Program-made: the position numbers and the translations under genes
Shown here: positions 10,956-61,200 of the stretch, in pieces
Layout: each line of letters opens with the position of its first letter
Position numbering within the stretch: the stretch's first letter is position 1
The notes under the pieces: model-generated
Seen by the model: only the letters and a program-made list of their open reading frames with translations
What the model was told of the DNA's origin: nothing
Database searches by the model: none
NCBI RefSeq assembly: GCF_035594765.1
Contig: NC_085841.1
Span: 329,849,402-329,913,401, forward strand
Source of the DNA: Anolis carolinensis
Lineage: Eukaryota
DNA: 64,000 bases
Direction: 5' to 3'

Positions 10956-11094
10956 TTTTGCTTGCTTTACTTCTATTAGTTCCTTCATAATCTGTGACTC
11001 TGATCTATAGCTCATTTAGCCTGGCAGTGGGCCAACATGCCCAACAACAACACAAGTACAACCATGCTCCCAAACAAGTGGCAGACTTGTTGCA

Positions 11095-11242
11095 AAACAT
11101 GACGGTTTTGTGCTTCATTTGTAAAATCATAACATAATTTGATGTTTAATAGGCTTTTCTTTAATCCCTCCTTATTATCCAACATTTTCGCTTATCCAAC
11201 ATTCTGCCGACCCGTTTATGTTGGATAAGCGAGACTCTACTG
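11095..11242. mobile_element. Partial Tc1/mariner MITE (CAGTAGAGTCTC family)
   Basis: One TIR TTGGATAAGCGAGACTCTACTG; homologous to 14037-14344. Confidence 0.8.
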
Positions 11243-11744
11243 TGTTTTGAATTGACAAACTATTGCAAAATGTGCTGCATGATGTCCCGCAAATGCAAAG
11301 TTTTTGCAGTTTAATAAACCTTTTCCGTATTTTTATGATAGAACCAGTTAGGAAAAGACATTCATATCCCAAGAACAAAAATCATATTAATGTATTAATT
11401 CAATGGGTTACATTTAATGTCACTTTGGACTGCTTCTTCCCATTTCCACAGCCACAAATTCTTATAAAAACAGAAATAAAATGTTTGATTTGCTCTTTCT
11501 TATTCATTATTGTGCTAAATGAGATCACCCAAGCCACAACAAGAGAATCTTGTGACACCTTAAATTGAATGGGAATCTTGGCAATTACATGGGTGAAACC
11601 ATGCTCTTCCAATATATTTGGCCAATTTGGATGGACTCTATGGCCAATTTAGTTAAATATGTTATTTCTATATAATGTACAGCCAGCTGAGAATAACAGA
11701 AAAAAAGGTTCTGCTAAATCCAGCACTCTGCTTCCCATGAGGAG

Positions 11745-13910: not shown

Positions 13911-14377
13911 CAGGCAGTCCACAAGTTACAAATAGATAGGTTTGTTCTGAAGTTGAATTTGTAGGTAGGTCTGAACAGGTACATTTTTAAAGTGTAACTC
14001 CAGTCATATATATCACACACAACACACATATATATACAGTAGAGTCTCACTTATCCAACATAAACGAGCCGGCAGAACGTTGGATAAGCGAATATGTTGG
14101 ATAATAAGGCGGGATTAAGGAAAAGCCTATTAAACATCAAATTAGGTTATGATTTTACAAATTAAGCACCAAAACATCATGTTATACAACAAATTTGACA
14201 GAAAAAGTAGTTCAATACGCAGTAATGCTATGTAGTAATTACTGTATTTATGAATTTAGCACCAAAATATCACGATGTATTGAAAACATTGACTACAAAA
14301 ATGCGTTGGATAATCCAGAATGTTGGATAAGTGAGACTCTACTGTATATATAATCCAAAGCTAGCGCTCTCTCTCTC

Positions 14378-15116: not shown

Positions 15117-15403
15117 GGGCCCTTCCAGACAGATCCTATATCCCAGGATCTGATCCCAGGTTTTCTGTTTATTCCAGATTATCTGGCAGTGCAGACTCAT
15201 ATAATCCAGTTTAAATCAGAAAACCTGGGATCAGATCCAGGGATAAATGGCCTTTCTGGGGGCCCTTCCAGACAGCCCTATATCCCAGAATATCAAGGCA
15301 GAAAATCCCACAATATCTGCTATGAGCTGGGTTATCTGAGTCCATACTCTGATAATGTGGGATTTTCTGCCTTGATATTCTGGGATATAGGACTGTGTGG
15401 AAG
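15117..15403. mobile_element. Tandem Harbinger-like palindromic MITEs
   Basis: GGCCCTTCCAGACAG termini and internal inverted symmetry. Confidence 0.6.
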
Positions 15404-17569: not shown

Positions 17570-18330
17570 AAAAGCTTATGGTCCCAAAATTTGTTGGAGA
17601 ACTGTCAAGAAGACTGTACTATGAAAACAAACAGTTACTGAAAAAGAATTATGAATTTCAATTGATTTCTCGAAAGAAGTAAATTAGACAGAAAAGCCTT
17701 TATGGTTTTGAACTCTGTCTGAATTTGAAGCCCAGTTATGCATGAATCAGCAAGAATTGGCAAAATGTATGAACTTTTGTTAGAATTTGGGATGGAAGGA
17801 TTTTATCATAAAATGGGCTAGAAATTTTAGACATAATATACAAATGGCACTGTGGGAAAGGATATGGTCTAAAGCAGGCATGGGCAAACTCCAGCCCTCC
17901 AGGTGTTTTGGACTACAACTCCCACAATTCCTAACAGCCTACGGGTTGTTAGGAATTGTGGGAGTTGCAGTCCAAAACACCTGGAGGGCTGAAGTTTACC
18001 CATGCCTGGTCTAAAGGCTGAAATGTACTTTATGTTATGATTTTGGTAAGATTTTTAAAATGAAATTGTGTATAAAGGAATATGGAATATATACTGGCAA
18101 AGTGGTAAGCCAGAAGGGTCTTTTTCACATATGTGATGGACATGTGGAAATGTTAAAAATATTGGGTTCAAATACAGTGTGCTACCATTAAAAAACCCAT
18201 TAATATTTAATTAAAACCTGAATGTCTGAAAACAGGAGTATGCTCAACTAAAAAAGGTGGCATGGAAGCATATCTCACATCTGAGTAAAAATAAAATAAT
18301 GATGGAATGGGAATAAAGTGTACTGTGCTT
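17570..18330 (+). mobile_element. Decayed L1-clade ORF2 fragment interrupted by a hAT MITE
   Basis: IKWARNFRHNIQMALWERIWSK and remnant cysteine-rich (H..WTC) region. Confidence 0.6.
17875..18008. mobile_element. hAT MITE, 134 bp
   Basis: TIR CAGGCATGGG/CCCATGCCTG; perfect 8-bp TSD GTCTAAAG. Confidence 0.92.
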
Positions 18331-19232: not shown

Positions 19233-25403
<6,171 letters not shown>

Positions 25404-26365: not shown

Positions 26366-38592
<12,227 letters not shown>

Positions 38593-39465: not shown

Positions 39466-39706
39466 AAATTAAAAATGCCACAGAATGCATAGAACTGATA
39501 CTGGAAGTATAGACCCAGAAACTAATGGTGTGAGATCACTTTCTTTATGCCTGTCCTGATAGCTCATTTTAATTGTTTTGTATGTATGTAGTCACATATA
39601 TCTTCATCTTGGCTCAAAATGGGCTTATGGTCATGTATGGGCTGAGAAAGCATGGGCCTACTTCAGCCCTCCAGGTGTTTTGGACTTCGACTTCCACAAT
39701 TCATTG

Positions 39707-40394
39707 CTGGGTTGCTGTGAATTTTCCGGGCTGTATGGCTATGTTCCAGAAGCATTCTCTCCTGACGTTTCACCCACATCTATGGCAGACATCCTCAGAG
39801 GTTGCGAGGTCTGTTGGAAACTAGGCAAGTGGGATTGATATATCTGTGAAAAGTCCAGGGTGGGAGAAAGAACTCTTGTCTGTTTGAGGCAAGTGTGAAT
39901 TTTGCAATTGGCCCAATACTAATCAATTTTGCAATTGATTAGTATTGAATAGCCTTGCAGCTTCAAAGCCTGGCTGCCCCCTGCCTGGGATAATCCTTTG
40001 TTGGGAGGTGTTAGCTGGCCCTGATTATTTCCTGTCAATCAAACAGGGGGATTCCAGACAGGAAACAATCAGGGCCAGCTAAAACCTCCCAACAAAAGAT
40101 TCCCCCAGGCAGGGAGCAGCCAAACTTTGACGCTACAAGGTTTTTCAATGCTAATCATGGTGGCCAATTGCAACATTCACTTGCCTCTAACAGACAAGAG
40201 TTATTTCTCCCACCCTGGACTTTTCACAGATATATCAACCCCACTTGCCTAGTTTCCAATAGACCTCATAACCTCTGAGGATGCCTGCCATAGATGTGGG
40301 CGAAATGTCAGGAGAGAATGCTTCTGGAACATGGGCATACAGCTCGGAAAACTCATAGCAACTCAATGATTCCAGCCATGAAAGCCTTCGACAA
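39707..40394. mobile_element. Penelope-like element, inverted pair, inserted in a hAT MITE within MLH3 intron 1
   Basis: 39707-40036 versus 40057-40365 inverted; hAT MITE halves at about 39647-39703 and 40396-40467. Confidence 0.78.
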
Positions 40395-40559
40395 AGCCGG
40401 TAGGCTGTTAGGAATTGTGGGAGTTGAAGTCCAAAATACCTAGAGGGCCGAAGTTGGCCCATGCCTGGTGAATAGAGAAACTATTCCAAACTCCAAAACA
40501 AATCTGAAATCCAACACACTCCAGCTCCCAAGAGATCCCCAACCTGTAAGAATGAGTCA

Positions 40560-44112: not shown

Positions 44113-45070
44113 CTAAAAGAGAAAATCCATATGCAGAAGATGCAATGATCTGTTTGAATACACAGAAAACCTCAATCTGCCTTTTTATAAGAACCAATAT
44201 TCTTAAAACAGTAAGAAACTTGCTGTTCAACACAAATTTCTGTTATATCGGTCCTCTATCCCTATCCCTGGAAATGCAAACTGAATCTATTTTAAGCCAC
44301 TTCGGGTCTCTTTTTAGAAATATAAAATGGGATATAAATAAATAAGTACATATAATAATAAAAATAAAATATAGCCTGACAGCTGGTTCCAATATTAATC
44401 TTGAATGTGTCTGCTCTTAAGTAAGGCCCCTTCCACACTGCCCTATATTCCAGGATCTGATCCCAAATTATCTCAGATTATATGGCAGTGTAGACCCATA
44501 TAATCCAGTTCAAAGTAAATAATCTGGATCAGATCCTGGGATATAGGGCAGTGTAGATCCAACCTAAGTCTCTTAAGTAAGTCCTGTTAAATTCAGTGAG
44601 ACTTACTCACTAGAAAGGGATACCAAATTGCAATCTATTTTACCCAGCTAAAACCTTTTAAGATGACCATCTGATCCATTTAACAGCTTTTAAGTTTAAT
44701 TTTTTTTATTGACTTGTATGTTTAATTCAATATTTTGATGTTGTGAATTTTTAATGGCATTGGAATTTGAGGTGTTTTTTGTGGTGTGAGCCACTTTGTG
44801 TCTTGGTCAAGAGATAAAAGCTTGATATAACAACAACAAATCCAAAACACCTGGAGGGCCAAAGTTTGCTCATGCCTGCTTTAAAGTGTGTTAAATGGCC
44901 AGCGTAGATGGGGCCTGTGAGAGTGTGACTTGCCGTTCAATACCACTGAACTCAAGTAGCCTTGTTTCCAGGATGGGCATAGATACCTGCGTGTATTTGC
45001 GGAAAAACACCCCTTGCACTTTCCCGAACACTTCATAATCGATTGACACGAGGCCATCTCCTTCAGCCAT
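43897..45070 (-). CDS. ACYP1: Acylphosphatase-1 (2 coding exons, 99 aa)
   Basis: Exons 45070-44987 and 44112-43897 total 300 nt; catalytic motifs VQGVFFRK and GWVQNT; position between MLH3 and ZC2HC1C. Confidence 0.96.
44425..44564. mobile_element. Harbinger-like MITE in ACYP1 intron
   Basis: Palindromic, TAA on both sides. Confidence 0.7.
44987..45070 (-). CDS. ACYP1: ACYP1 first coding exon (acceptor at 45082)
   Basis: MAEGDGLVSIDYEVFGKVQGVFFRKYTQ; ACCATGG Kozak context; CAG|GTATCT donor. Confidence 0.95.
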
Positions 45071-45239
45071 GGTCGGTGATCCCTGGATCAAAAGCAAAAG
45101 CGCAATTAGGCCGGAGAGAAAACGTAGGGGCCGAACCCATATCTCCCCACCAGCCTCCAGTGATCGCTCCATGGGGAGCTGCCCTGTAGCCCTGTCCTCT
45201 GAAGGGGGAAGTGAAGGCCAAATGGCAAGGCAAGGGCAT

Positions 45240-45560
45240 TGGGTAAACTCTGCCTTCATTTGCATCCTCATGAATATGTAAAGCAGGGGGCGGGGGAGAG
45301 TTTTTGGCACCTGCAGGCTCTTTGGGGCCGCCTGAAGGTATATCCAACAGCCTCCCCTCCTCAGAAGAGGGGCTGCCTTCCTCAGCCAATCAGCAGCCAG
45401 AGCGCGCTCTCTGGGCTCTAACCGCCAGTAACGGCTGGGCTCAGAAACCACAGAGCTGACCTCCGTCTTTCTGACTAGAGTAGCCCCTCCCGAAGCCGTA
45501 GACCGGAAGTGAGGTAAACCTCCTTGGGTTACGGACTGCAGCCGGCAAAGACTGCAAAGA
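45240..45560 (-). promoter_or_regulatory. ACYP1 proximal promoter region, possible short exon 1 ending at 45461
   Basis: CpG-enriched. ETS CCGGAAGT 45503-45510, CCAAT 45386-45390, GC box 45287-45295, octamer ATTTGCAT 45258-45265, candidate donor GAG|GTCAGC at 45460. Confidence 0.6.
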
Positions 45561-46031: not shown

Positions 46032-46166
46032 CAGTGGTTCTCAACCTGTGAGTCCCCAGATGTTTTGGCCTTCAACTCCCAAAAATCCTAACAGCTGGTA
46101 AACTGGGTGGAATTTCTGGGAGTTGTAGGCCAAAACACCTGAGGACCCACAGGTTGAGAACCACTG
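46032..46166. mobile_element. hAT MITE
   Basis: TIR CAGTGGTTCTCAACCTGTG; TSD gcatagat/gcatggac. Confidence 0.88.
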
Positions 46167-46396: not shown

Positions 46397-46834
46397 TATG
46401 GTTGTGTGGGGTGGGGAGAACCCGTATTTGGACATTATCTTTATTAAAATTATTGTTTATACTTGTTTATTTATTTATATCCTGCTTTTTCTCTCTATAT
46501 GGAGACTCAAAGCGGCTCACAATCAAAAACATTACAACTTAAAATATACAACAATAAAACAGTATGTCATTATATATTACTAGTATTATATTTAATATAT
46601 TCTTTTATATTACAACATTATTATTAGTATTATATTGTGTTTTATTATGTTATTAATATTATATGTAGGTAAAGGTAAAGATTTCTACTATACAAAATCC
46701 CAGAATGCTTGTAAAGTATCTATACAAACACAAGATAGTCTATGTACAAAGAAAATATGTCCAAATAGCATATAGTATTACTAAAGTTCCCTGTACAAAG
46801 CTCAATTTCGTAGTACCAGACAAAATGAAAAGAT

Positions 46835-46963
46835 TTCGCTTATCCAAGCTTCTGCCGGCCCGTTTAGCTTGGATAAGTGAGACTCTACTGTATTAGTATT
46901 ATTACATTACGGTGTTATTATTTCTATATATTATTTGTTCTCTCTCTCTCTCTCTCTCTCTCG

Positions 46964-46996
<33 letters not shown>

Positions 46997-47154
46997 GCAA
47001 ATAAAACAATAATTTTTATAGAGAATTAAATGTGTGTGTGTGTGTATCAGGCATGGGCAAACTTCGGCCTTCCAGGTGTTTCCAGCTGAAGTTTGCTCAT
47101 GCCTCATACACACACACATACAGTATATTAAAACCAACCCAAATGGACTTCAAC
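46835..47154 (+). repeat. Local direct duplication, copy A (copy B 48460-48779)
   Basis: Same order of MITE end, (CT)n(AT)n, mini-hAT and unique flank; differences mostly in microsatellite length. Confidence 0.9.
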
Positions 47155-47225
47155 AGCTCTAACACAGAAGTTATCCAAGTCTGATATTGGTTCCAATGTA
47201 TATAGGCTTCAGGGATACATAATCA

Positions 47226-47591
47226 ATGAAAATATCTTCCAAACAAAGTAAACAGACAGTTGGTCATGTTGCTGTATACTGGAATGAAGAAAATAATGAT
47301 AGAGCACCACTGTCAAGAAAGTCTTTGCAAGTAAAGTCTAAATACTTGTTACTCTATGTTTTGTTTTAGATATAAATTCATTGTTGCTGGGTATACCAAC
47401 TCCTGAAGAAGGGGATTTTCTTCCCGAAACAGGGTACAAAAATACCCTGGAACCCCTGTAGACTTGGAACTTTATTTGGACTTTACTTGCGAAGACTTTC
47501 TTGAGAGCGATGCTCCATCATTATTTTCTTCATTCCAGTATACAGCAACACGACCAACCATCTGTTTACTTTGTTTGGAAGATATTTTCAT
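47226..47591. repeat. 119-bp inverted repeat (47226-47344 / 47473-47591) enclosing the hammerhead; probable Penelope-like element remnant
   Basis: Arms are reverse complements with about ten substitutions. Confidence 0.8.
47389..47472 (+). ncRNA. Putative type I hammerhead ribozyme
   Basis: CUGAAGA 47403-47409; stem II GGGGA/UUCCC; GAAA 47426-47429; stem III ACAGGG/CCCUGU; GUA cleavage triplet 47458-47460; stem I CCAACUC/GACUUGG with one mismatch. Confidence 0.75.
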
Positions 47592-48022
47592 GGCAGTGTG
47601 GACTCAAGATAATCCAGTTCAAAGCAGATACTGTGGATTATCCTGCTTTGGCATTCTGGGTTATATAGGTGTGTGGAAGGGCATTGAGTTTACACTGCCA
47701 TATAATCCAGTTCAAATTAGATAATCTGTATTTTATAGGCAACGTGGAAGAGGCCTGAGTGAAGAGGTCCTGGGCACCATTCTGCCTGAGTGGGTTGCTA
47801 GGAGATGAGGTGGGCGGAGCCTACCCTTCTAACTGGCAGCAAGGGGGAAAAACAGTCCTTCCCCTTCCTCTAATTTGGACTTAATTTTTCTAGGTTTTTT
47901 TTGTTTAAAAGACATAGACTGGATGACTATGTCTTTTGTGGCCAAATTTGGTGTGATTTGGTTCAGTGTTGTTGTTTACTCCATAGTAAAACATCACATT
48001 ACATTTTTTTATATATAGAAGA
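47592..48022 (-). mobile_element. Possible non-autonomous Helitron fragment
   Basis: Minus-strand start TCTTCTATATATAAAA and internal MITE-like modules; no 3' CTAG end found. Confidence 0.4.
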
Positions 48023-48192
48023 TTATATTGTACTATCTTATTATACCACAATATATATAATGCACTGCCAGCATATTATACTATTAGTATTATATAATAT
48101 ATTGTAGTATATCGTAAGTTGTAGTCTATATAATATATATTATATTGCAACATTATTAATATTATTAAGATTATATAATACATTAGTATATA

Positions 48193-48515
48193 CAGTAGAG
48201 TCTCACTTATCCAAACCTCGCTTATCCAAGCTTCTGGATTATCCAAGCCATTTTTGTAGTCAATGTTTTCAATATATCATGATATTTTGGTGCTAAATTT
48301 GTAAATACAGTAATTACAACATAACATTACTGCGTATTGAACTACTTTTTCTGTCAAATTTGTTGTATAACATGATGTTTGGGTGCTTAATTTGTAAAAT
48401 CATAACCTAATTTGATGTTTAATAGACTTTTCCTTAATCCCTCCTTATTATCCAAGATATTCGCTTATCCAAGCTTCTGCCGGCCCGTTTAGCTTGGATA
48501 AGTGAGACTCTACTG
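48193..48515. mobile_element. Tc1/mariner MITE, complete
   Basis: TIR CAGTAGAGTCTCACTTATCCAA, TA TSD. Confidence 0.9.
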
Positions 48516-48563
48516 TATTAGTATTATTACATTACGGTGTTATTATTTCTATATATTATTTGT

Positions 48564-48607
<44 letters not shown>

Positions 48608-48779
48608 ATATTAGCAAATAAAACAATAATTTTTATAGAGAATTAAATGTGTGTGTGTGTGTATCAGGCATGGGCAAACTTCGGCCTTCCAGGTGTTTTG
48701 GACTTCAGCTGAAGTTTGCCCATGCCTCATACACACACACATATACAGTATATTAAAACCAACCCAAATGGACTTCAAC
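48460..48779 (+). repeat. Local direct duplication, copy B
   Basis: Matches 46835-47154; contiguous with a complete MITE, so probably the source copy. Confidence 0.9.
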
Positions 48780-48889
48780 TCCCAGTCTCCCCTGCCATTA
48801 CAGCGAGCGTCAAGGGATTGTGGGAGCTGTATCCAGCCAGCGTCATCTGACAGGTCCGGGTGGCACCTCACTTAAAGAGGCAGAGCAGG

Positions 48890-49350
48890 AATGGCTAGGC
48901 GGTCTCTGCGTGCGCGTTGCTAGGCAATCGTGGTAAACAACCTAGCCGGAGTCAGGGTCAGAAGGTTAGCGCGGTAGCGGAGGGAGGGGGGCGTGCCGGT
49001 GCGCGAGCACACGTTGCCATAGTGACGGAGCCGCTCTTTGGGCCTCGCGGCTTTTTGAGGCGGAAGATCCATGTCTCCTCGTTATCGGCAGCGGGTAAGC
49101 CGACTGGGCAGTCGCATTCGTTGTGTGCGACGATGTTAACTGCTAGCCTGCTTCCTCAACGACATGGCTCTCAGTAGTAAACAACCCGGAGTACGAGTGC
49201 CCTTGAACTAGAGACGTCACCTCCAGTTCACGAAAATTAGCTTAACTGCGGCCTGAGGCTTCTGCCAAACAGAGCTCGTTTCTTCAGAACCTCTGAGGCC
49301 AAAATCAAATGCCCCTTCTTGCTGTATGTTTGAATGAACCACACTGAGGT
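48890..49350 (+). promoter_or_regulatory. ZC2HC1C CpG-island promoter and non-coding first exon(s)
   Basis: RFX X-boxes 48916-48928 and 49013-49026, forkhead GTAAACAA 48933-48940 and 49177-49184, donors CGG|GTAAGC (49095) and GAG|GTAAGT (49349). Confidence 0.75.
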
Positions 49351-49597
49351 AAGTCGTCTCCGAGGGAAGCGCTCTCGCTTAACCCTTTGGCTGCCTTTCT
49401 TATTTGCATCGTAGCTGGGAGTTTTGAATATGAATGTAGTTTCTTGAGTTACTATTAAACGTCGGTCTAACGAATACTGTTGCCATACCATAAACTCTGT
49501 ACTGACTAGATATTTAAATACTGTCATTAAAAACAGACGCAAACTTATACAAACATTGATTTTATATTTATTTTTTAAAGTATTGTTTCTTCAGGTT

Positions 49598-51642: not shown

Positions 51643-52878
51643 ATGGCTCAGTTGCAGCTGACTGCGTATTCACCTATGGATCCAACAGCATGCAATCCAG
51701 GTCTTCCTGGAACAAGCCAGGAAAGATGTCATTCCGAAGCTCTCAAAGAACAGTCCCAATTGGAACATCTGAGGACTAACATCCAACAACAGCTCCTGTG
51801 CAGTAAAGATAAGAAGCAGGTAGATCTTCATATCCAAAAAGGGCACAAGTCATCTTGTTCTCAGCCTGCAGAACGTACTCGGCTGATCTTAGAGAAAGCA
51901 GGCTTCTATTCTGCTGGCCCTTGCAACTGGTATTTCAAGGGACAGGCTGGCACATTGCCCTCTCATTGGAGAACCAAGCGGAGAGAAGGTGTGGACAGGG
52001 CATATCCACTTAAACCAGTCTTTCACCATGAAGCAGGGAATGCTAATCTTCCCAGTTCTTCAGCTAGAGAGACTCCTTCTAGTGGTACTAGCTCAGAGAA
52101 AAAAGGAAGACTGAATACAGTTAAAGTTCAGCATGGTAGAATGCGAGCCCCTTCTGTTGAAGAATCTAAGAAAACAGCTTCTCATCCACAATGGGCAGAG
52201 TCGGGTTACATTCAAAAGCTGGAGGCTGCTGGACGGAGCTTGGAGGAAGAGATCCAGCGCAAGGAGGCCATTCTCAGGGAAAAGCTGAGGAGAACAGAAG
52301 ACGAGCTTCGAAGAATTCAGTGGGAAAGGCAGCAGGCTGAAGCAGAAGCAAGAAGGGAGCGAGGAGCTCTATGGGTTCCTGAGAGGAAAGCAGCAGGCAT
52401 GGCACAGGGTAGTTTTTCAAGATTTACAACCCAGCCACGTACCTGTCAGAAGGCATATGTTTCAGAGAGCTCCATGGTCTCAGTGGGAACTGTTCGGCTT
52501 TCCCAGCCACAGCATATAGAAAAGCTAAAAAAACAAAGGTTGGTGGCCAGCAACAGTAAAATTCGAGAACATACACCCAACTGTAGCCCAGAACTGACTC
52601 CTGTGCATGACCTAGCTATTTCAGTTGCAACTCCTTTAGGGCAGATTAGCCATTTGGCAGCAGAGCCATTACATACGGAGGCTCCAAGCAATGTGGAGGA
52701 GTGGGGAGAGTGCAGGATCTGTGGGCGGAGACTTTATCGCTCCAGACTAGAGAAGCATGTTAGCATATGCAGCAAGAATCACAGCTCCAAGAGAAAGGTG
52801 TTTGATTCGAGCAAAGCTAGAGCAAAAGGCACTGAACTGGAAACTTATCATCTCTTAAAGGGCTCAGATATTTCCCAG
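51643..52878 (+). CDS. ZC2HC1C: ZC2HC1C large coding exon (acceptor 51624)
   Basis: 412 codons; donor CAG|GTAATA at 52879. Confidence 0.9.
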
Positions 52879-54139
52879 GTAATACACATACTTGCTTATT
52901 ATATGCATCCTGGGTTCTTTCTTTTGTTTATATGATGTTTTCATGCAGTCCTTGATGTGTGCTGACTAGCCTGACTTCTCCTTTGCTTTAGCAACCTAAC
53001 TGCATCATTTGTTCTCAGCTGCATACACCTTGTATGGCTGAGAAGACATTCACTCTGGGTAAGGAGAAGTTATGATAGCTGTTTAAGATCCCTCAAGCAC
53101 CTCTAACTTCAATTCAGGTATTTAAATGTAGCCACGGATAAGGTAATTTCTAGAAGATATAAGATAAGATTCCAGGAAGAAATATTAAAGTTAAAGTTTA
53201 GTTCAAGATTCTGAAACTTGGTCTAGAGAGGATAGGCTTCAAATTCTTTGACCTCTTTTGTCATACACAAATGAGCAGTAGAGGATGTCATAACACGTGC
53301 TCAGAACTGTCACGTTACTATAGGAGAACATGTAACATTAAGTCATATATAACTAATCTCTAAAAGTCATAATGACAAAATAGCATTATAGTCAGGAGCT
53401 CATGGCAATGAAAAGCCATTAATCTCAAGAGTCATGAATAGCAATGTAATTAGGTTTTTTGTTTTCGACTATATGTCTTGACTTCACTGTCCAGTTAAAT
53501 ATTCATAATTCAAGAGAACTAATATACTAATATCATTTATGCTCCAGTGACAACGTTCCAATAAATTGAATTCGGCAAAGTGAGTGGCTTAGGTCTGCTG
53601 TGGGCCCATGAGCAAGATGTCATGACTTTAAAAAGCAGTAATCATTCAGTCCAACCAGTAAAAGGTTGGTCTTCGCATATGTTGTGTAATTTGATGTCCA
53701 ACTGGAATTGGGAATTTACTGTATTAGAACTATCTTGTCTTCCATGTACAGGGCAAAAAATGTATCAAGAAGCATCATATCAGCTATCAGCTTATACTAA
53801 TGGTTTCTCCACTTCCTCTTGTCACTACAGAAAAAAGCTTCCAACCAGTGTTCTGATGCTTCCAAGAAAATTGGTGATATATCTAAACAAAGCAACTGGC
53901 GACAGAAGCATGAATCTTTCATTAAGACCTTGCGCAGGGCTCGTGAAGTCCAGCGAGTAATCTCCAAAGGAGGGAAGGCCTCAGATCTTCCCCCAATACC
54001 TGCCATGGAAAACCCAGACTACAAACTGTGCCCTTATTGCACCCGTCAGTTTGCACCTAAGGTGGCTGAGAGACACATTCCCAAGTGCAAGAACATTAAG
54101 AACAGACCCCCACCACCACAGCAAAAGAAACAATGCTAG
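51643..54139 (+). CDS. ZC2HC1C: Zinc finger C2HC domain-containing protein 1C (FAM164C), about 514 aa
   Basis: Coding exons 51643-52878 and 53831-54139. REGVDRAYPLKPVFH motif, coiled coil, two C2HC fingers (CRICGRRLYRSRLEKHVSIC; CPYCTRQFAPKVAERHIPKC), synteny between ACYP1 and NEK9. Confidence 0.9.
53831..54139 (+). CDS. ZC2HC1C: ZC2HC1C last coding exon
   Basis: ctacag acceptor; SNWRQKHESFIKTLRRAREVQ...DYKLCPYCTRQFAPKVAERHIPKCKNIKNRPPPP; TAG. Confidence 0.88.
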   Translation, partial: KKASNQCSDASKKIGDISKQSNWRQKHESFIKTLRRAREVQRVISKGGKASDLPPIPAMENPDYKLCPYCTRQFAPKVAERHIPKCKNIKNRPPPPQQKKQC

Positions 54140-58241: not shown

Positions 58242-61200
58242 CTGTCCAGACAGAAAAAAAAAGATTCACTGCCAGCTAAGTAAAAATATCGGTAATGTAT
58301 TACAATATGAAATATGCTCATCAGATGTCTGGTTTGAATGCAGTTGTGCTGAATTCCTGGTTATTTCACAAATCTATAAAGAATAAAATGGCAAAGTGTA
58401 TGGTGCAACATTGCCAATTAAATATTACTAAAATGTCTTCTATGTATTAAGAATATACACACATACATACGGGGACAGTCTGCCCTTGTTATTAGCTAAC
58501 TGGGCTAATATGTACAAAGTATTAGACAAGCAGTTGAGAGAAAAAATAACTGTATTCTAATAATTATAATTGTATCCCGACTGCCAGATCCCAGGGTTCT
58601 CCAAGGTAGGGGAAAGGGAATGAAAGCGGTGTGGTTTAGATGGGGCCCGTCTATTTCCAGTGCTGGCTGACACTAACATTCCAGATTAATTTGGCATTTT
58701 CCCCGACTGCTCTCAAAAACTTGCTTTTTTTTTTTTTACCATACATGGCCTCTTGAAATAATAGAAAGTGAAAGGCCAAGATTGTCTGAAATTCTTGGAT
58801 CATTACAGTGCAATCCAGAGTCTATGTTCAGTCACACGGTAACCCACTCTTATCCAGTGATTCTATATCTCAGCACCAATTGCCAAGAATTTCAAGAATA
58901 CTCAGAACAATTCTGCTTTCTCATCTGACAAATTCCTCCAGTAGAAATGTCACCTCCTGGGTTCCTTGTGTCCTTTTGATGAGACTCTGGAGCTGAGCAT
59001 TGAGGCGGCTGGTTTCCTGCTGAAGCTTCTCCTGGTCAGCCAAGCACTTCGAGATTAAGCTACTCAGGCGCTCCACTTCAGCCTGCAGTAAACTGCATTT
59101 ACATGGAGTTGGTACTGCAGAGGTGTTTTCACCACTACAAGGTTCTGCTGAATCTGGAAGGCGCTGCAACAAAATGAGCTTAAATTAGTTTGTATGTAGA
59201 CATGTAGACATCTATGCCCAATATGTAAAACTGCTTGTCTATGTTATGGCTGGAAAATAAGAACAGAGCTAATTTCAGAATCTAATCTAATTTCGGAAAG
59301 TGATGAGTGATCTAATAGGGTCTTTCATAGGTTTTGTGTGTGTGTGTGTGTGTGTGTGTGTCTGTGTGTCAGGAGCGACTTGAGAAACTGCAAGTCGCTT
59401 CTGGTGTGAAAGAATTGGCCATCTGCAAGGACGTTGCCAAGGGGATGCCCAAATGTTTTTTTTTTTTAATGTTTTTACAATCCTTGTGGGAAGCTTCTCT
59501 CATGTCCTCACATGGAGTTGATAGAGCTCCAGTTGGATTTAAACCTTCAGGTCAGCAACCCAACCTTCAAGTCATCAGTCCTGCCGACACAATGGTTTCA
59601 CCCACTGCGTCGCTGGAGGCTCCCTTTCATAGGTACAGTAGAGTCTCACTAATCCAAGCCTCGCTTATCCAAGCCTCTGGATTATCCAAGCCATTTTTGT
59701 AGTCAATGTTTTCAATATATCGTGATATTTTGGTGCTAATTCGTAAATACAGTAATTACAACATAACATTACTGCGTATTGAACTACTTTTTCTGTCAAA
59801 TTTGTTGTATAACATGATGTTTTGGTGCTTAATTTGTAAAATCATAACCTAATTTGATGTTTAATAGGCTTTTCCTTAATCCCTCCTTATTATCCAAGAT
59901 ATTCGCTTATCCAAGCTTCTGCTGGCCCGTTTAGTTTGGATAAGTGAGACTCTACTGTACTTCATATGATAGCATGAAACAGACATAAAAGATATTGGCC
60001 CCTGATAGTTTTTAGCAGTCTACCCCTCGATTCCACTTGATCAACTGCTTGTGTGGTTAATTGTGTTGCCATTAATTAACCATCATAAAAAGACTGCCCT
60101 CTTCCTGTTTTGTTTACTACATGTAATCTGTTTTCAGACTAATTTATAATCCTTGCTGAGTTCTGTAGATCCATTCAGTTTAAAAAACATTCTATTAACA
60201 CACCTCTTATCCTTAATAGAGAAACGTTTTAAAAGCCGCTCATTATACATGCAATGGACAATCTCAGCCCTAAAGGGTTATATGATGATAGAGGTTTACT
60301 TTACCCAGGAACCTGCATTGGTCTTGTTATTATCAATAGGTGTTGGAGGAGCCATGTGGAGTCCTTTCAGTTCATCATAGGGAAGAGTTTCTTTGTCAGA
60401 TTCAGATTCTAGGCTTGCGAGAGAAGGAGTTTCAGGCATGGGGATGAACTCGGCACTCTCCAACTCCTAGTCAAAAAGAGATGACAAACAGATTTCTTTC
60501 TTATTCTTTCCTAAAGCTTGGGAAAGCAATCCTTTGGGACTGAAGCTCTCAGAATATCTTTACTATCACAAAAGGTAACTTATTACAAACTGTGTTAACT
60601 ACAAACCCCACCATGGATGTAATATGAGAAATACAAAGGAGAGATGCAAGTAGCTTTCTGCTTAGAGAATTGACTGAATGCAGGTGACATCTATACCATC
60701 ACAGAAATATTGTGAACACAGTGATTGTTATACAAATTATTAATACTAATATTATGTAATAATAAATACTATTATTACTAACATTATGAGCACAGCAAAC
60801 TACTGTTGGAAGTATTAATCCTGCTCTTGGAGAGTATCTTCTCAACTGTACACAAGTATCAGAATTGAGGCGCAGTAACAACCTAATTATAGTAGAATCT
60901 TCATAGTGTGGTTTTGTGTCCGAAGAATATTAAAAAATTTTCCACAGCACAGACTGAAAAGCTGGGAATAAGTTTCAAAGTCACTGTGGGAGAAAGGTTA
61001 TTTTGCTTTATCTTCTAATCCCAAGGCTAATGAATGTCATTACCTTGCGTAACCAACTGGGGCAAGAGCTGCAGGCAGCACTGCTATCTGTAATAGCTTC
61101 ATTAGCACAGATGCGATCTCCCATTTTACGGTCAGCTTCCATGGTTCCCCGGAAACCCCTGCTTGGATCAGGGATATCAGTCTCTCGCTCACTGTCTTCC

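What the first reader, a model, noticed from the sequence alone, without database searches (positions are those of the whole stretch)
47389..47472. Complete type I hammerhead ribozyme fold between the ACYP1 and ZC2HC1C promoters
Seen: all canonical core nucleotides are present on the + strand. CUGAAGA 47403-47409, one extra A, stem II GGGGA-uuuuc-UUCCC, GAAA 47426-47429, 6-bp stem III ACAGGG(47429-34)/CCCUGU(47454-59), and a GUA triplet predicting cleavage after 47460. Stem I is CCAACUC/GACUUGG (one C-C mismatch), extended by an AUA/A internal loop and GGGU/ACUU. Established: Penelope-like retroelements and retrozymes carry type I hammerheads, and an extra base after A9 is tolerated in natural examples. 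Inference: unlike the minimal motifs elsewhere in the window this one has a real stem III and could cleave as a monomer. Its flanks do not match the common Penelope family seen here, so it may mark a distinct ribozyme-bearing retroelement family.
Basis: partly seen in the sequence, partly recalled or inferred. Interest (0 to 1): 0.82.

Follow-up and report, generated by a model that had tools for sequence, protein, structure and literature searches.

The report
Lone hammerhead-like motif in lizard repeat
A complete-looking hammerhead ribozyme motif really is present in this green anole intergenic stretch, most likely as a decaying leftover of a Penelope-type retrotransposon insertion, but it is a single copy that is predicted to misfold, so it is a minor variant of something already common in this genome.

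Summary
Chance is an unlikely source: 0 of 950 simulated 64-kb windows match an equally lenient descriptor. From the window's own sequence I expect about 7e-4 matches per window, or about 1e-6 if G10.1-C11.1 and C15.2-G16.2 are also required.

The window is Anolis carolinensis, between ACYP1 and ZC2HC1C. The motif lies in the 128-nt unique spacer of a 119-nt inverted repeat (arms 92% alike), next to the right arm and reading outward. That layout fits a Penelope-like head-to-head, 5'-truncated insertion, like the Poseidon mini-element at 39.7-40.4 kb. The motif has the Penelope hammerhead hallmark of an extra base after A9. The element is absent from the orthologous A. sagrei and Phrynosoma loci.

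Against an active ribozyme:
- No Rfam hammerhead model matches, but none matches the two Poseidon motifs either.
- The hammerhead fold is 6.8 kcal/mol worse than the best fold, and a competing hairpin takes stem III (stem III probability 0.002).
- Stem I has a C-C mismatch.
- No second copy was found, so covariation cannot be tested.

Verdict: probable Penelope-type hammerhead relic (about 0.55), chance look-alike (about 0.25), still-active monomer (about 0.15-0.2). Other windows of this genome carry unchecked notes of Penelope-borne hammerheads. None is a look-alike of this sequence.

The parts
47389..47472 (+). Type I hammerhead-like motif (whole). The predicted cut is between 47460 and 47461.
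   Evidence: Letters and pairs verified. It is the only descriptor match in the window. 0 of 950 simulated windows match.
47403..47410 (+). Core box C3-A9 (CUGAAGA) plus one unpaired A between A9 and G10.1.
   Evidence: A base at this position is reported as conserved in Penelope min-hammerheads (PMC4209133). It is also present, as U, in the Poseidon motifs at 39798(-) and 40275(+).
47411..47425 (+). Helix II: 5 pairs opening with G10.1-C11.1, and a 5-nt loop.
   Evidence: Pairing probability is only about 0.025 in the 84-nt RNA and 0.06 in the whole fold-back RNA.
47426..47460 (+). GAA box; helix III of 6 pairs (47429-34 with 47454-59) closed by a 19-nt loop; A17 at 47460.
   Evidence: Forced helix III is -6.3 kcal/mol, and its pairing probability is 0.002 or less.
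47430..47449 (+). Competing 7-pair hairpin (47430-36 with 47443-49) that takes up the 5' strand of helix III.
   Evidence: It forms in the best fold. It is worth -9.0 kcal/mol alone and has probability 0.96 in the whole fold-back RNA.
47226..47344 (-). Left arm of the inverted repeat. I read it as the shorter, 5'-truncated inverted copy, which lacks the hammerhead.
   Evidence: 119 nt, 92% complementary to 47473-47591. The repeat does not extend further inward.
47345..47388 (+). Rest of the unique spacer, upstream of the motif.
   Evidence: The spacer is not self-complementary beyond shuffles (378 of 500 shuffles score as well) and has no other copy in the window.
47473..47591 (+). Right arm of the inverted repeat. 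I read it as the 3' part of the longer copy, which carries the hammerhead 131 nt from its outer end.
   Evidence: The motif reads outward, in the same orientation as in the Poseidon head-to-head element at 39703-40411.

Best explanation
The motif descends from a real hammerhead ribozyme. It is the type I ribozyme of a Penelope-like, or Penelope-mobilised non-autonomous, retroelement that inserted here in the A. carolinensis lineage as a head-to-head pair of 5'-truncated copies. The longer copy is at most 47345-47591 on the + strand. It keeps the ribozyme 131 nt from its 3' end. The shorter inverted copy (47226-47344) is cut off 12 nt downstream of the predicted cleavage site and lacks the ribozyme.

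In the parent element the ribozyme would have cut the transposon transcript after the GUA triplet. The genomic copy has drifted since insertion: the arms differ by 7.6%, about 3 changes expected per 84 nt. It now has a C-C mismatch in helix I and a stronger rival hairpin over helix III. As it stands it should be a poor or dead self-cleaver with no host function.

Shown: the letters, their statistical rarity, the inverted-repeat layout, absence from A. sagrei, and the unfavourable fold. Inferred: Penelope origin, past activity and present inactivity.
For: - All core and helix letters are present. It is the only match in the window.
- 0 of 950 simulated windows match. The empirical expectation is 6.9e-4 per window, or 1.3e-6 with canonical G10.1-C11.1 and C15.2-G16.2. 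That is about 19 and 0.04 per 1.8-Gb genome.
- This genome is dense in Penelope hammerheads. Two Poseidon min-hammerheads lie 7 kb away, each also with an extra base after A9.
- PMC4209133 lists the base between 9 and 10.1 and G10.1-C11.1 as recurrent features of Penelope hammerheads.
- PMC8557442 describes an inverted 5'-truncated copy next to the element as typical of Penelope-like insertions.
- The inverted repeat has a unique spacer, and the motif abuts the right arm and reads outward, as in the Poseidon mini-element.
- The same core, bulge and helix II string occurs in a clear min-hammerhead family in 23 metagenome contigs.
- The element is absent from the orthologous A. sagrei and Phrynosoma loci. 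Arm divergence of 7.6% against 17.4% for alignable intergenic DNA between the two anoles dates the insertion to after their split.
- The hammerhead fold scores -15.2 against -22.0 kcal/mol for the best fold. Helix III probability is 0.002 in the 84-nt RNA and 0.0005 in the whole fold-back RNA.
Against: - No second copy was found anywhere I could search, so family membership, covariation and the true element ends are untested. I could search only 64 kb of this genome.
- There is no similarity to the Poseidon element in the window.
- There is no reverse transcriptase ORF, no clear target-site duplication and no recognisable 'tail'.
- No Rfam hammerhead model matches, even at E<=10 in a 101-nt search.
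- A 325-bp direct duplication of the same age (92.5%) brackets 47155-48453. The inverted repeat could therefore be part of a local rearrangement and not a transposon insertion.
- The G- and C-run composition of the spacer offers more pairings than a Markov model assumes.
Confidence: 0.55

Rival explanations
1. Chance look-alike. The spacer of a local inverted duplication, possibly made in the same rearrangement as the flanking 325-bp direct duplication, happens to contain CUGAAGA and GAAA boxes. Its G- and C-runs can be drawn as three helices. It never was a ribozyme.
For: - It is single copy in everything searched.
- No Rfam hammerhead match.
- The 91-nt stretch folds no better than its shuffles (z = -0.67), and the best fold is not a hammerhead.
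- The direct and inverted repeats have the same divergence.
- With the loose descriptor about 19 chance matches are expected per 1.8-Gb genome, and many windows are being read.
- The 3' strand of helix I overlaps a weak 11-nt tandem duplication at the arm boundary.
Against: - The per-window expectation is 7e-4 at most, and about 1e-6 once the two canonical pair identities that it also satisfies are required. 0 of 950 simulated windows match.
- It also has the Penelope-type extra base after A9.
- It sits in the orientation and position expected of a Penelope head-to-head insertion, in a genome full of such elements (PMC4209133; PMC8557442).
Confidence: 0.25
2. This is a still-functional type I hammerhead with a stable helix III that cleaves as a monomer. 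It belongs to an undescribed ribozyme-bearing retroelement family. The two exclusive pairings of the helix III 5' strand may act as an on/off switch.
For: - The core is intact, with a GUA site, G10.1-C11.1 and a 6-pair helix III.
- About 56% of copies of this age would keep all 15 or so invariant positions. This is my estimate from the arm divergence.
- Monomer-stable hammerheads with a large helix III are known in Penelope-like elements of fungi and protists, and one of them was active in vitro (PMC4209133).
- Unchecked first-stage notes report full-size hammerheads in Neptune-type elements elsewhere in this genome.
Against: - The hammerhead fold is 6.8 kcal/mol above the best fold.
- The rival hairpin is transcribed before the 3' strand of helix III. 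It has probability 0.96 in the fold-back RNA.
- There is a C-C mismatch three pairs from the core in helix I.
- In a transcript spanning the element the 119-nt arms would pair (whole fold-back -201 kcal/mol).
- No family was found. The element is not conserved in A. sagrei, so no selection is visible.
- The shorter copy does not begin at the predicted cut site.
- Metazoan Penelope hammerheads cleave poorly in vitro even when helix III is extended (PMC4209133).
Confidence: 0.17

Closest known systems
Minimal hammerhead ribozymes of metazoan Penelope-like elements (Cervera & De la Pena 2014, PMC4209133), including the Poseidon/PAc motif of A. carolinensis (PMC11167929), present in this window at 39798(-) and 40275(+)
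   Same: - Type I topology and the CUGANGA / GAAA core.
- An unpaired base between A9 and G10.1, and a G10.1-C11.1 pair.
- C15.2-G16.2 followed by U and H.
- A helix II of 5-6 pairs.
- The motif lies within about 60-130 nt of the outer end of an inverted (head-to-head) repeat and reads outward.
   Different: - Those motifs have essentially no helix III (ACGU palindrome) and are thought to work as dimers. This one has a 6-pair helix III with a 19-nt loop.
- It has no sequence similarity to the Poseidon element.
- It has no AUG at the start of helix II (AAG here).
- It is a single copy with the motif in only one of the two inverted copies. The others are an abundant family.
Monomer-stable type I hammerheads with a large helix III in Penelope-like elements of fungi and protists (PMC4209133)
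   Same: A long helix III closed by a loop, helix I open, carried by a Penelope-type element.
   Different: Those occur in endonuclease-lacking, telomere-associated elements of other kingdoms. One was shown to cleave, and they recur in families. Here nothing is shown beyond sequence, and the fold is disfavoured.
Animal non-LTR retrozymes and their solo monomers (Cervera & De la Pena 2020, as cited in PMC8557442; bioRxiv 10.64898/2026.07.22.740005)
   Same: A short non-coding unit with a type I hammerhead, intergenic, in a vertebrate class where such elements and Penelope-like elements co-occur.
   Different: Retrozymes are defined by head-to-tail tandem units, each with a hammerhead. Here there is no tandem array but an inverted repeat.
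Chrysanthemum chlorotic mottle viroid (+) hammerhead with an extra A between A9 and G10.1 (De la Pena & Flores 2001, as cited in PMC4209133)
   Same: The same extra-nucleotide position in an otherwise canonical core. That the base is A is from my own recall.
   Different: It is a type III hammerhead of a plant viroid. The resemblance is limited to that one position.

Membership tests
Hammerhead ribozyme, type I | Invariant core: C3 U4 G5 A6 N7 G8 A9, G12 A13 A14, A15.1-U16.1, and H17 not G | tested here: met
   47403-09, 47426-28, 47429/47459 and A at 47460. There is one extra A after A9, a position tolerated in natural motifs (PMC4209133).
Hammerhead ribozyme, type I | Three helices around the core, with I open and II and III closed | tested here: inconclusive
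   The helices can be drawn: I has 6 of 7 pairs plus 4 more, II has 5, III has 6. The fold scores -15.2 against -22.0 kcal/mol for the best fold. Pair probabilities are 0.2-0.3 for helix I, 0.025 for II and 0.002 for III.
Hammerhead ribozyme, type I | Match to a curated covariance model (Rfam Hammerhead_1, _3, _II, HH9, HH10) | tested here: not met
   No hammerhead hit at gathering score, nor at E<=10 in searches of 64 kb, 601 nt and 101 nt. The two Poseidon motifs used as a control are also missed, so this is a weak test.
Hammerhead ribozyme, type I | Conservation of the core and compensatory changes in the helices among homologues | not testable with these tools
   No homologue was found in the window, in two orthologous lizard loci, in metagenome contigs or in the scan's index. 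The rest of the Anolis genome could not be searched.
Hammerhead ribozyme, type I | Site-specific self-cleavage | not testable with these tools
   Needs transcription and cleavage assays, or mapping of RNA ends.
Penelope-like element insertion | Inverted 5'-truncated copy next to the element, so that inverted repeats share the outer (3') ends | tested here: met
   Arms 47226-47344 and 47473-47591, 92% complementary, with a 128-nt unique spacer attached to one arm. The pattern is described in PMC8557442.
Penelope-like element insertion | Hammerhead in the terminal repeat, with the extra base after A9 | tested here: met
   PMC4209133.
Penelope-like element insertion | Sequence similarity to a known Penelope-like family, or a reverse transcriptase / GIY-YIG ORF | tested here: not met
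   No similarity to the Poseidon element in the window. No long ORF lies in or near the element. Repbase and Dfam were not available.
Penelope-like element insertion | Multiple dispersed copies; a target-site duplication; a 30-40-nt one-sided tail | tested here: inconclusive
   No other copy in 64 kb. The right flank is occupied by another small inverted-repeat element (47590-47701), so the flanks cannot be compared.
Non-LTR retrozyme | Head-to-tail tandem units, each with a type I hammerhead | tested here: not met
   No tandem array of the unit.

The most novel reading that the evidence does not exclude
The motif is the working ribozyme of an undescribed, low-copy lizard retroelement family related to Penelope-like elements. 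Its hammerhead has a stable helix III and cleaves as a monomer, unlike the dimer-dependent minimal hammerheads of metazoan Penelope-like elements. The rival hairpin would gate cleavage.
Probability: 0.12. Interest if true: 0.5.

Novelty: new member of a known kind. Interest (0 to 1): 0.3.

Why it matters
Hammerheads carried by Penelope-like elements are already known and very abundant in the green anole, so one more relic changes little.

It would matter modestly if genome-wide copies showed a family whose hammerhead has a real helix III. Published metazoan Penelope hammerheads are minimal and barely active alone. A monomer-competent animal variant would give a cleaner system for asking what ribozyme cleavage does in Penelope transposition.

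Nothing suggests a role for ACYP1 or ZC2HC1C. The element is absent from the sister anole locus.

Tried and rejected
**Searches that came back blank**
- Rfam at gathering score and at E<=10 on 64 kb, 601 nt and 101 nt: no hammerhead. Rfam on the Poseidon element as a positive control also found no hammerhead, so I do not count Rfam's silence for much.
- Paralogue hunt: BLASTN within the window, the scan index by sequence and by relatives, a word search with the 47-aa arm ORF and an exact 24-mer of the arm in metagenome contigs. All blank.
- Pfam on the long ORFs of the window, to find a transposon protein that could lead to more Anolis DNA: none.

**Orthologous loci**
- The A. sagrei locus (L002) and the Phrynosoma locus (L001) have no trace of the element. 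The intergenic DNA there is made of other lineage-specific repeats, so neither an empty site nor exact insertion ends could be read.

**Ideas rejected**
- That the shorter inverted copy starts at the ribozyme cut site, which would have hinted at in vivo cleavage. The repeat ends cleanly at 47344/47473, 12 nt past the cut, and an anchored extension scores 0.
- That the spacer is a degenerate palindrome. It is not.
- That an ORF starts in helix II as in PAc. The codon there is AAG, and that frame stops after 30 codons in both copies (my reading).

**Steps not taken**
- A covariance model built from the metagenome min-hammerheads. They were picked with a pattern taken from the candidate, so the test would be circular.
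- The large protein-representative search and the third word search. The only queries would be unverified short ORFs.

- No contig I fetched looked human. The window has no N.

Full report
**1. What is there**

- CUGAAGA at 47403-09, followed by one extra A at 47410.
- Helix II, 47411-15 with 47421-25: three G-C pairs, one G-U and one A-U, closed by a 5-nt loop.
- GAA at 47426-28.
- Helix III, 47429-34 with 47454-59: six Watson-Crick pairs opening with A15.1-U16.1 and C15.2-G16.2, closed by a 19-nt loop.
- A17 at 47460.
- Helix I, 47396-402 with 47461-67: 6 of 7 pairs, with a C-C mismatch at 47400/47463.
- An AUA/A internal loop, then four outer pairs, two of them G-U.

**2. Is it more than chance?**

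I wrote a descriptor just lenient enough to accept this candidate:
- core boxes;
- 0-1 extra base after A9;
- helix II of at least 5 pairs;
- helix III of at least 6 pairs starting A-U;
- H at position 17;
- helix I with 7 positions and at most one mismatch.

Results:
- The descriptor finds only this site in the window on either strand. Versions loosened to 3-pair helices also find only this site.
- It finds nothing in 950 simulated 64-kb windows with the same dinucleotide make-up.

I also multiplied component frequencies measured on the real window itself. That gives 6.9e-4 expected matches per window, and 1.3e-6 if the canonical G10.1-C11.1 and C15.2-G16.2 pairs are required as well. For a 1.8-Gb genome that is about 19 and about 0.04 chance matches.

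These estimates carry some hindsight, and the spacer is rich in G- and C-runs. Even so, chance is the less likely source in a genome where real hammerhead-bearing elements are very common.

**3. Model and folding tests**

- No Rfam hammerhead family matches at gathering score, nor at E<=10 in searches of 64 kb, 601 nt or 101 nt.
- Rfam equally misses the two Poseidon-type minimal hammerheads of this window. This negative therefore says little.

Folding is more telling:
- The hammerhead pairing scores -15.2 kcal/mol against a best fold of -22.0.
- Pair probabilities are 0.2-0.3 for helix I, 0.025 for helix II and 0.002 for helix III.
- The cause is a 7-pair hairpin, 47430-36 with 47443-49 (-9.0 kcal/mol alone). 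It uses the 5' strand of helix III and would be transcribed first.
- In an RNA spanning the whole fold-back element that hairpin has probability 0.96 and helix III 0.0005.
- The 91-nt stretch is no more stable than its shuffles (z = -0.67).
- Another first-stage note on the same stretch (s1-565766) called the two pairings a possible switch. The two pairings are real, but the 'off' form dominates strongly.

**4. Where it sits**

- The window is Anolis carolinensis. The ORF at 51643-52935 is 100% identical to its ZC2HC1C protein.
- 35389-38592(-) is the large MLH3 exon, and 44891-45451(-) holds the start of ACYP1.
- Blocks alignable with A. sagrei mark the ACYP1 5' region (44968-45514) and the ZC2HC1C promoter region (48759-49408).
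- The motif is therefore intergenic: 1.9 kb from the ACYP1 block and 1.3 kb from the ZC2HC1C block.

The local structure is an inverted repeat:
- The motif lies in the 128-nt spacer of an inverted repeat with 119-nt arms, 47226-47344 and 47473-47591, 92% complementary.
- The spacer is not itself palindromic, and the repeat stops cleanly at 47344/47473.
- The motif abuts the right arm and reads outward. Its predicted cut site is 131 nt from the outer end.

Nothing resembling 47226-47591 exists in the 22.5-kb orthologous loci of A. sagrei or Phrynosoma platyrhinos. The arms differ by 7.6%, against 17.4% for alignable intergenic DNA between the two anoles. The structure therefore arose after their split, and about three substitutions are expected in the 84-nt motif since then.

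**5. Comparison with known hammerhead carriers**

The Poseidon element in the same window:
- At 39703-40411 there is a head-to-head Penelope-like mini-element with a minimal hammerhead in each arm, at 39798(-) and 40275(+). Both read outward.
- Its AUG falls at the start of helix II, exactly as published for the PAc Poseidon element of this species (PMC11167929).
- These motifs also carry an extra base (U) after A9.

What the literature says:
- Cervera and De la Pena (PMC4209133) list four recurring features of Penelope hammerheads: the base between positions 9 and 10.1, G10.1-C11.1, a palindromic 15.2-16.2, and pairs of motifs on opposite strands 100-700 bp apart.
- Craig et al. (PMC8557442) describe an inverted 5'-truncated copy next to the element as typical.

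The metagenome family:
- A scan for the candidate's core, bulge and helix II string returned 23 contigs. They carry one clear minimal-hammerhead family: CUGAAGA, U, a 5-6-pair helix II, GAAAC, GUC.
- The two contigs I checked are ORF-poor and eukaryote-like.
- This 5' half is therefore a string that bona fide Penelope-type hammerheads use.

The candidate differs in three ways:
- It has a 27-nt insert between C15.2 and G16.2 that can form a real helix III.
- It is present in only one of the two inverted copies.
- It has no similarity to Poseidon.

**6. What could not be done**

The decisive test is paralogues. I could search only this window, two orthologous loci, metagenome contigs, the scan's index and a protein word index, and all were blank. 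The rest of the Anolis genome, Dfam and Repbase were out of reach. A blank here says only that the family, if any, is much rarer than Poseidon.

One complication remains. A 325-bp direct duplication (46830-47154 and 48454-48779, 92.5%) brackets 47155-48453, which contains the element, and it has the same divergence as the inverted arms. A single local rearrangement could therefore have made both.

**7. Reading**

| Explanation | Probability |
|---|---|
| Relic of a Penelope-type, or Penelope-mobilised, element inserted head-to-head. The longer copy retains a type I hammerhead that once processed the element's transcript and is now mismatched and out-competed by another fold. | about 0.55 |
| Chance look-alike in a local inverted duplication | about 0.25 |

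Membership in the hammerhead class is met for the core and drawable helices. It is not met for the curated models, and it is untestable for covariation and cleavage. The non-LTR retrozyme definition (tandem units) is not met.

**8. Novelty and interest**

- Penelope-borne hammerheads are published, and this scan's notes report them in many windows of this genome. These include unchecked notes of full-size 'Neptune-type' ones.
- At best this is a new member, or a minor variant, of a known kind. It is single-copy, unconserved and predicted to misfold. I score interest at 0.3.

Noticed in passing
window 39650-40464: Head-to-head Poseidon (PAc-type) Penelope mini-element at about 39703-40411, with an outward-reading minimal hammerhead in each arm (cores at 39798(-) and 40275(+)). 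It has a 46-nt one-sided extra piece (40366-40411) that looks like the published 'tail'. It sits in the middle of a palindromic small element whose halves are 39650-39702 and 40412-40464. The right copy reads GAAAUGUC where the left reads GAAACGUC. Rfam does not detect either hammerhead even at E<=10.
   Followed up: partly
window 46830-47154 and 48454-48779: A 325-bp direct duplication (92.5% identity) brackets 47155-48453. The upstream copy starts with only the last 64 bp of a roughly 327-bp dispersed repeat (full copy at 48191-48517; others at 59634-59959, 14034-14354 and 11079-11246). It then carries 262 bp of that repeat's downstream flank, whose last 21 nt are orthologous to A. sagrei L002:5483-5503. 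This looks like a read-through (3'-transduction-like) copy or a local rearrangement. It has the same divergence as the inverted arms around the motif.
   Followed up: partly
window 47590-47701: A 112-bp small inverted-repeat element with 18-nt terminal inverted repeats directly abuts the right arm of the fold-back. Related pieces lie at 44482-44529, 15294-15348 and 47702-47732, and in the A. sagrei locus at L002:2127-2226 (86%).
   Followed up: no
window 17901-17982, 20015-20097, 46058-46140: Near-perfect palindromic repeats score 54-72 bits on both strands against the Rfam mir-5408 model, below its gathering score of 90. They are most likely a hairpin-forming transposon family and not microRNA genes.
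   Followed up: no
L003-L025 (metagenome contigs); L023:1629-1696: 23 contigs from a set of related metagenomes carry one minimal-hammerhead family with an extra U after A9. The two contigs checked (L010, L014) have almost no ORFs, so they look like host eukaryote DNA. From memory these are insect-gut samples; I did not check this. In L023 an inverted copy of the usual upstream sequence is joined right at the CUGA box, a head-to-head junction inside the ribozyme.
   Followed up: partly
window 47462-47489: A weak tandem duplication of period 11-12 (TRF score 42) spans the boundary between the 3' strand of helix I and the start of the right arm. Part of helix I may therefore come from a small slippage or junction duplication.
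   Followed up: no
window 47407-47724: One + frame is open for 106 codons. It runs from just after the UGA inside the CUGA box, through the motif and the right arm, and into the neighbouring small element. It has no AUG before 47590, and the left-arm copy has a stop in this frame (TGA where the right arm has CGA). I take it for chance.
   Followed up: partly
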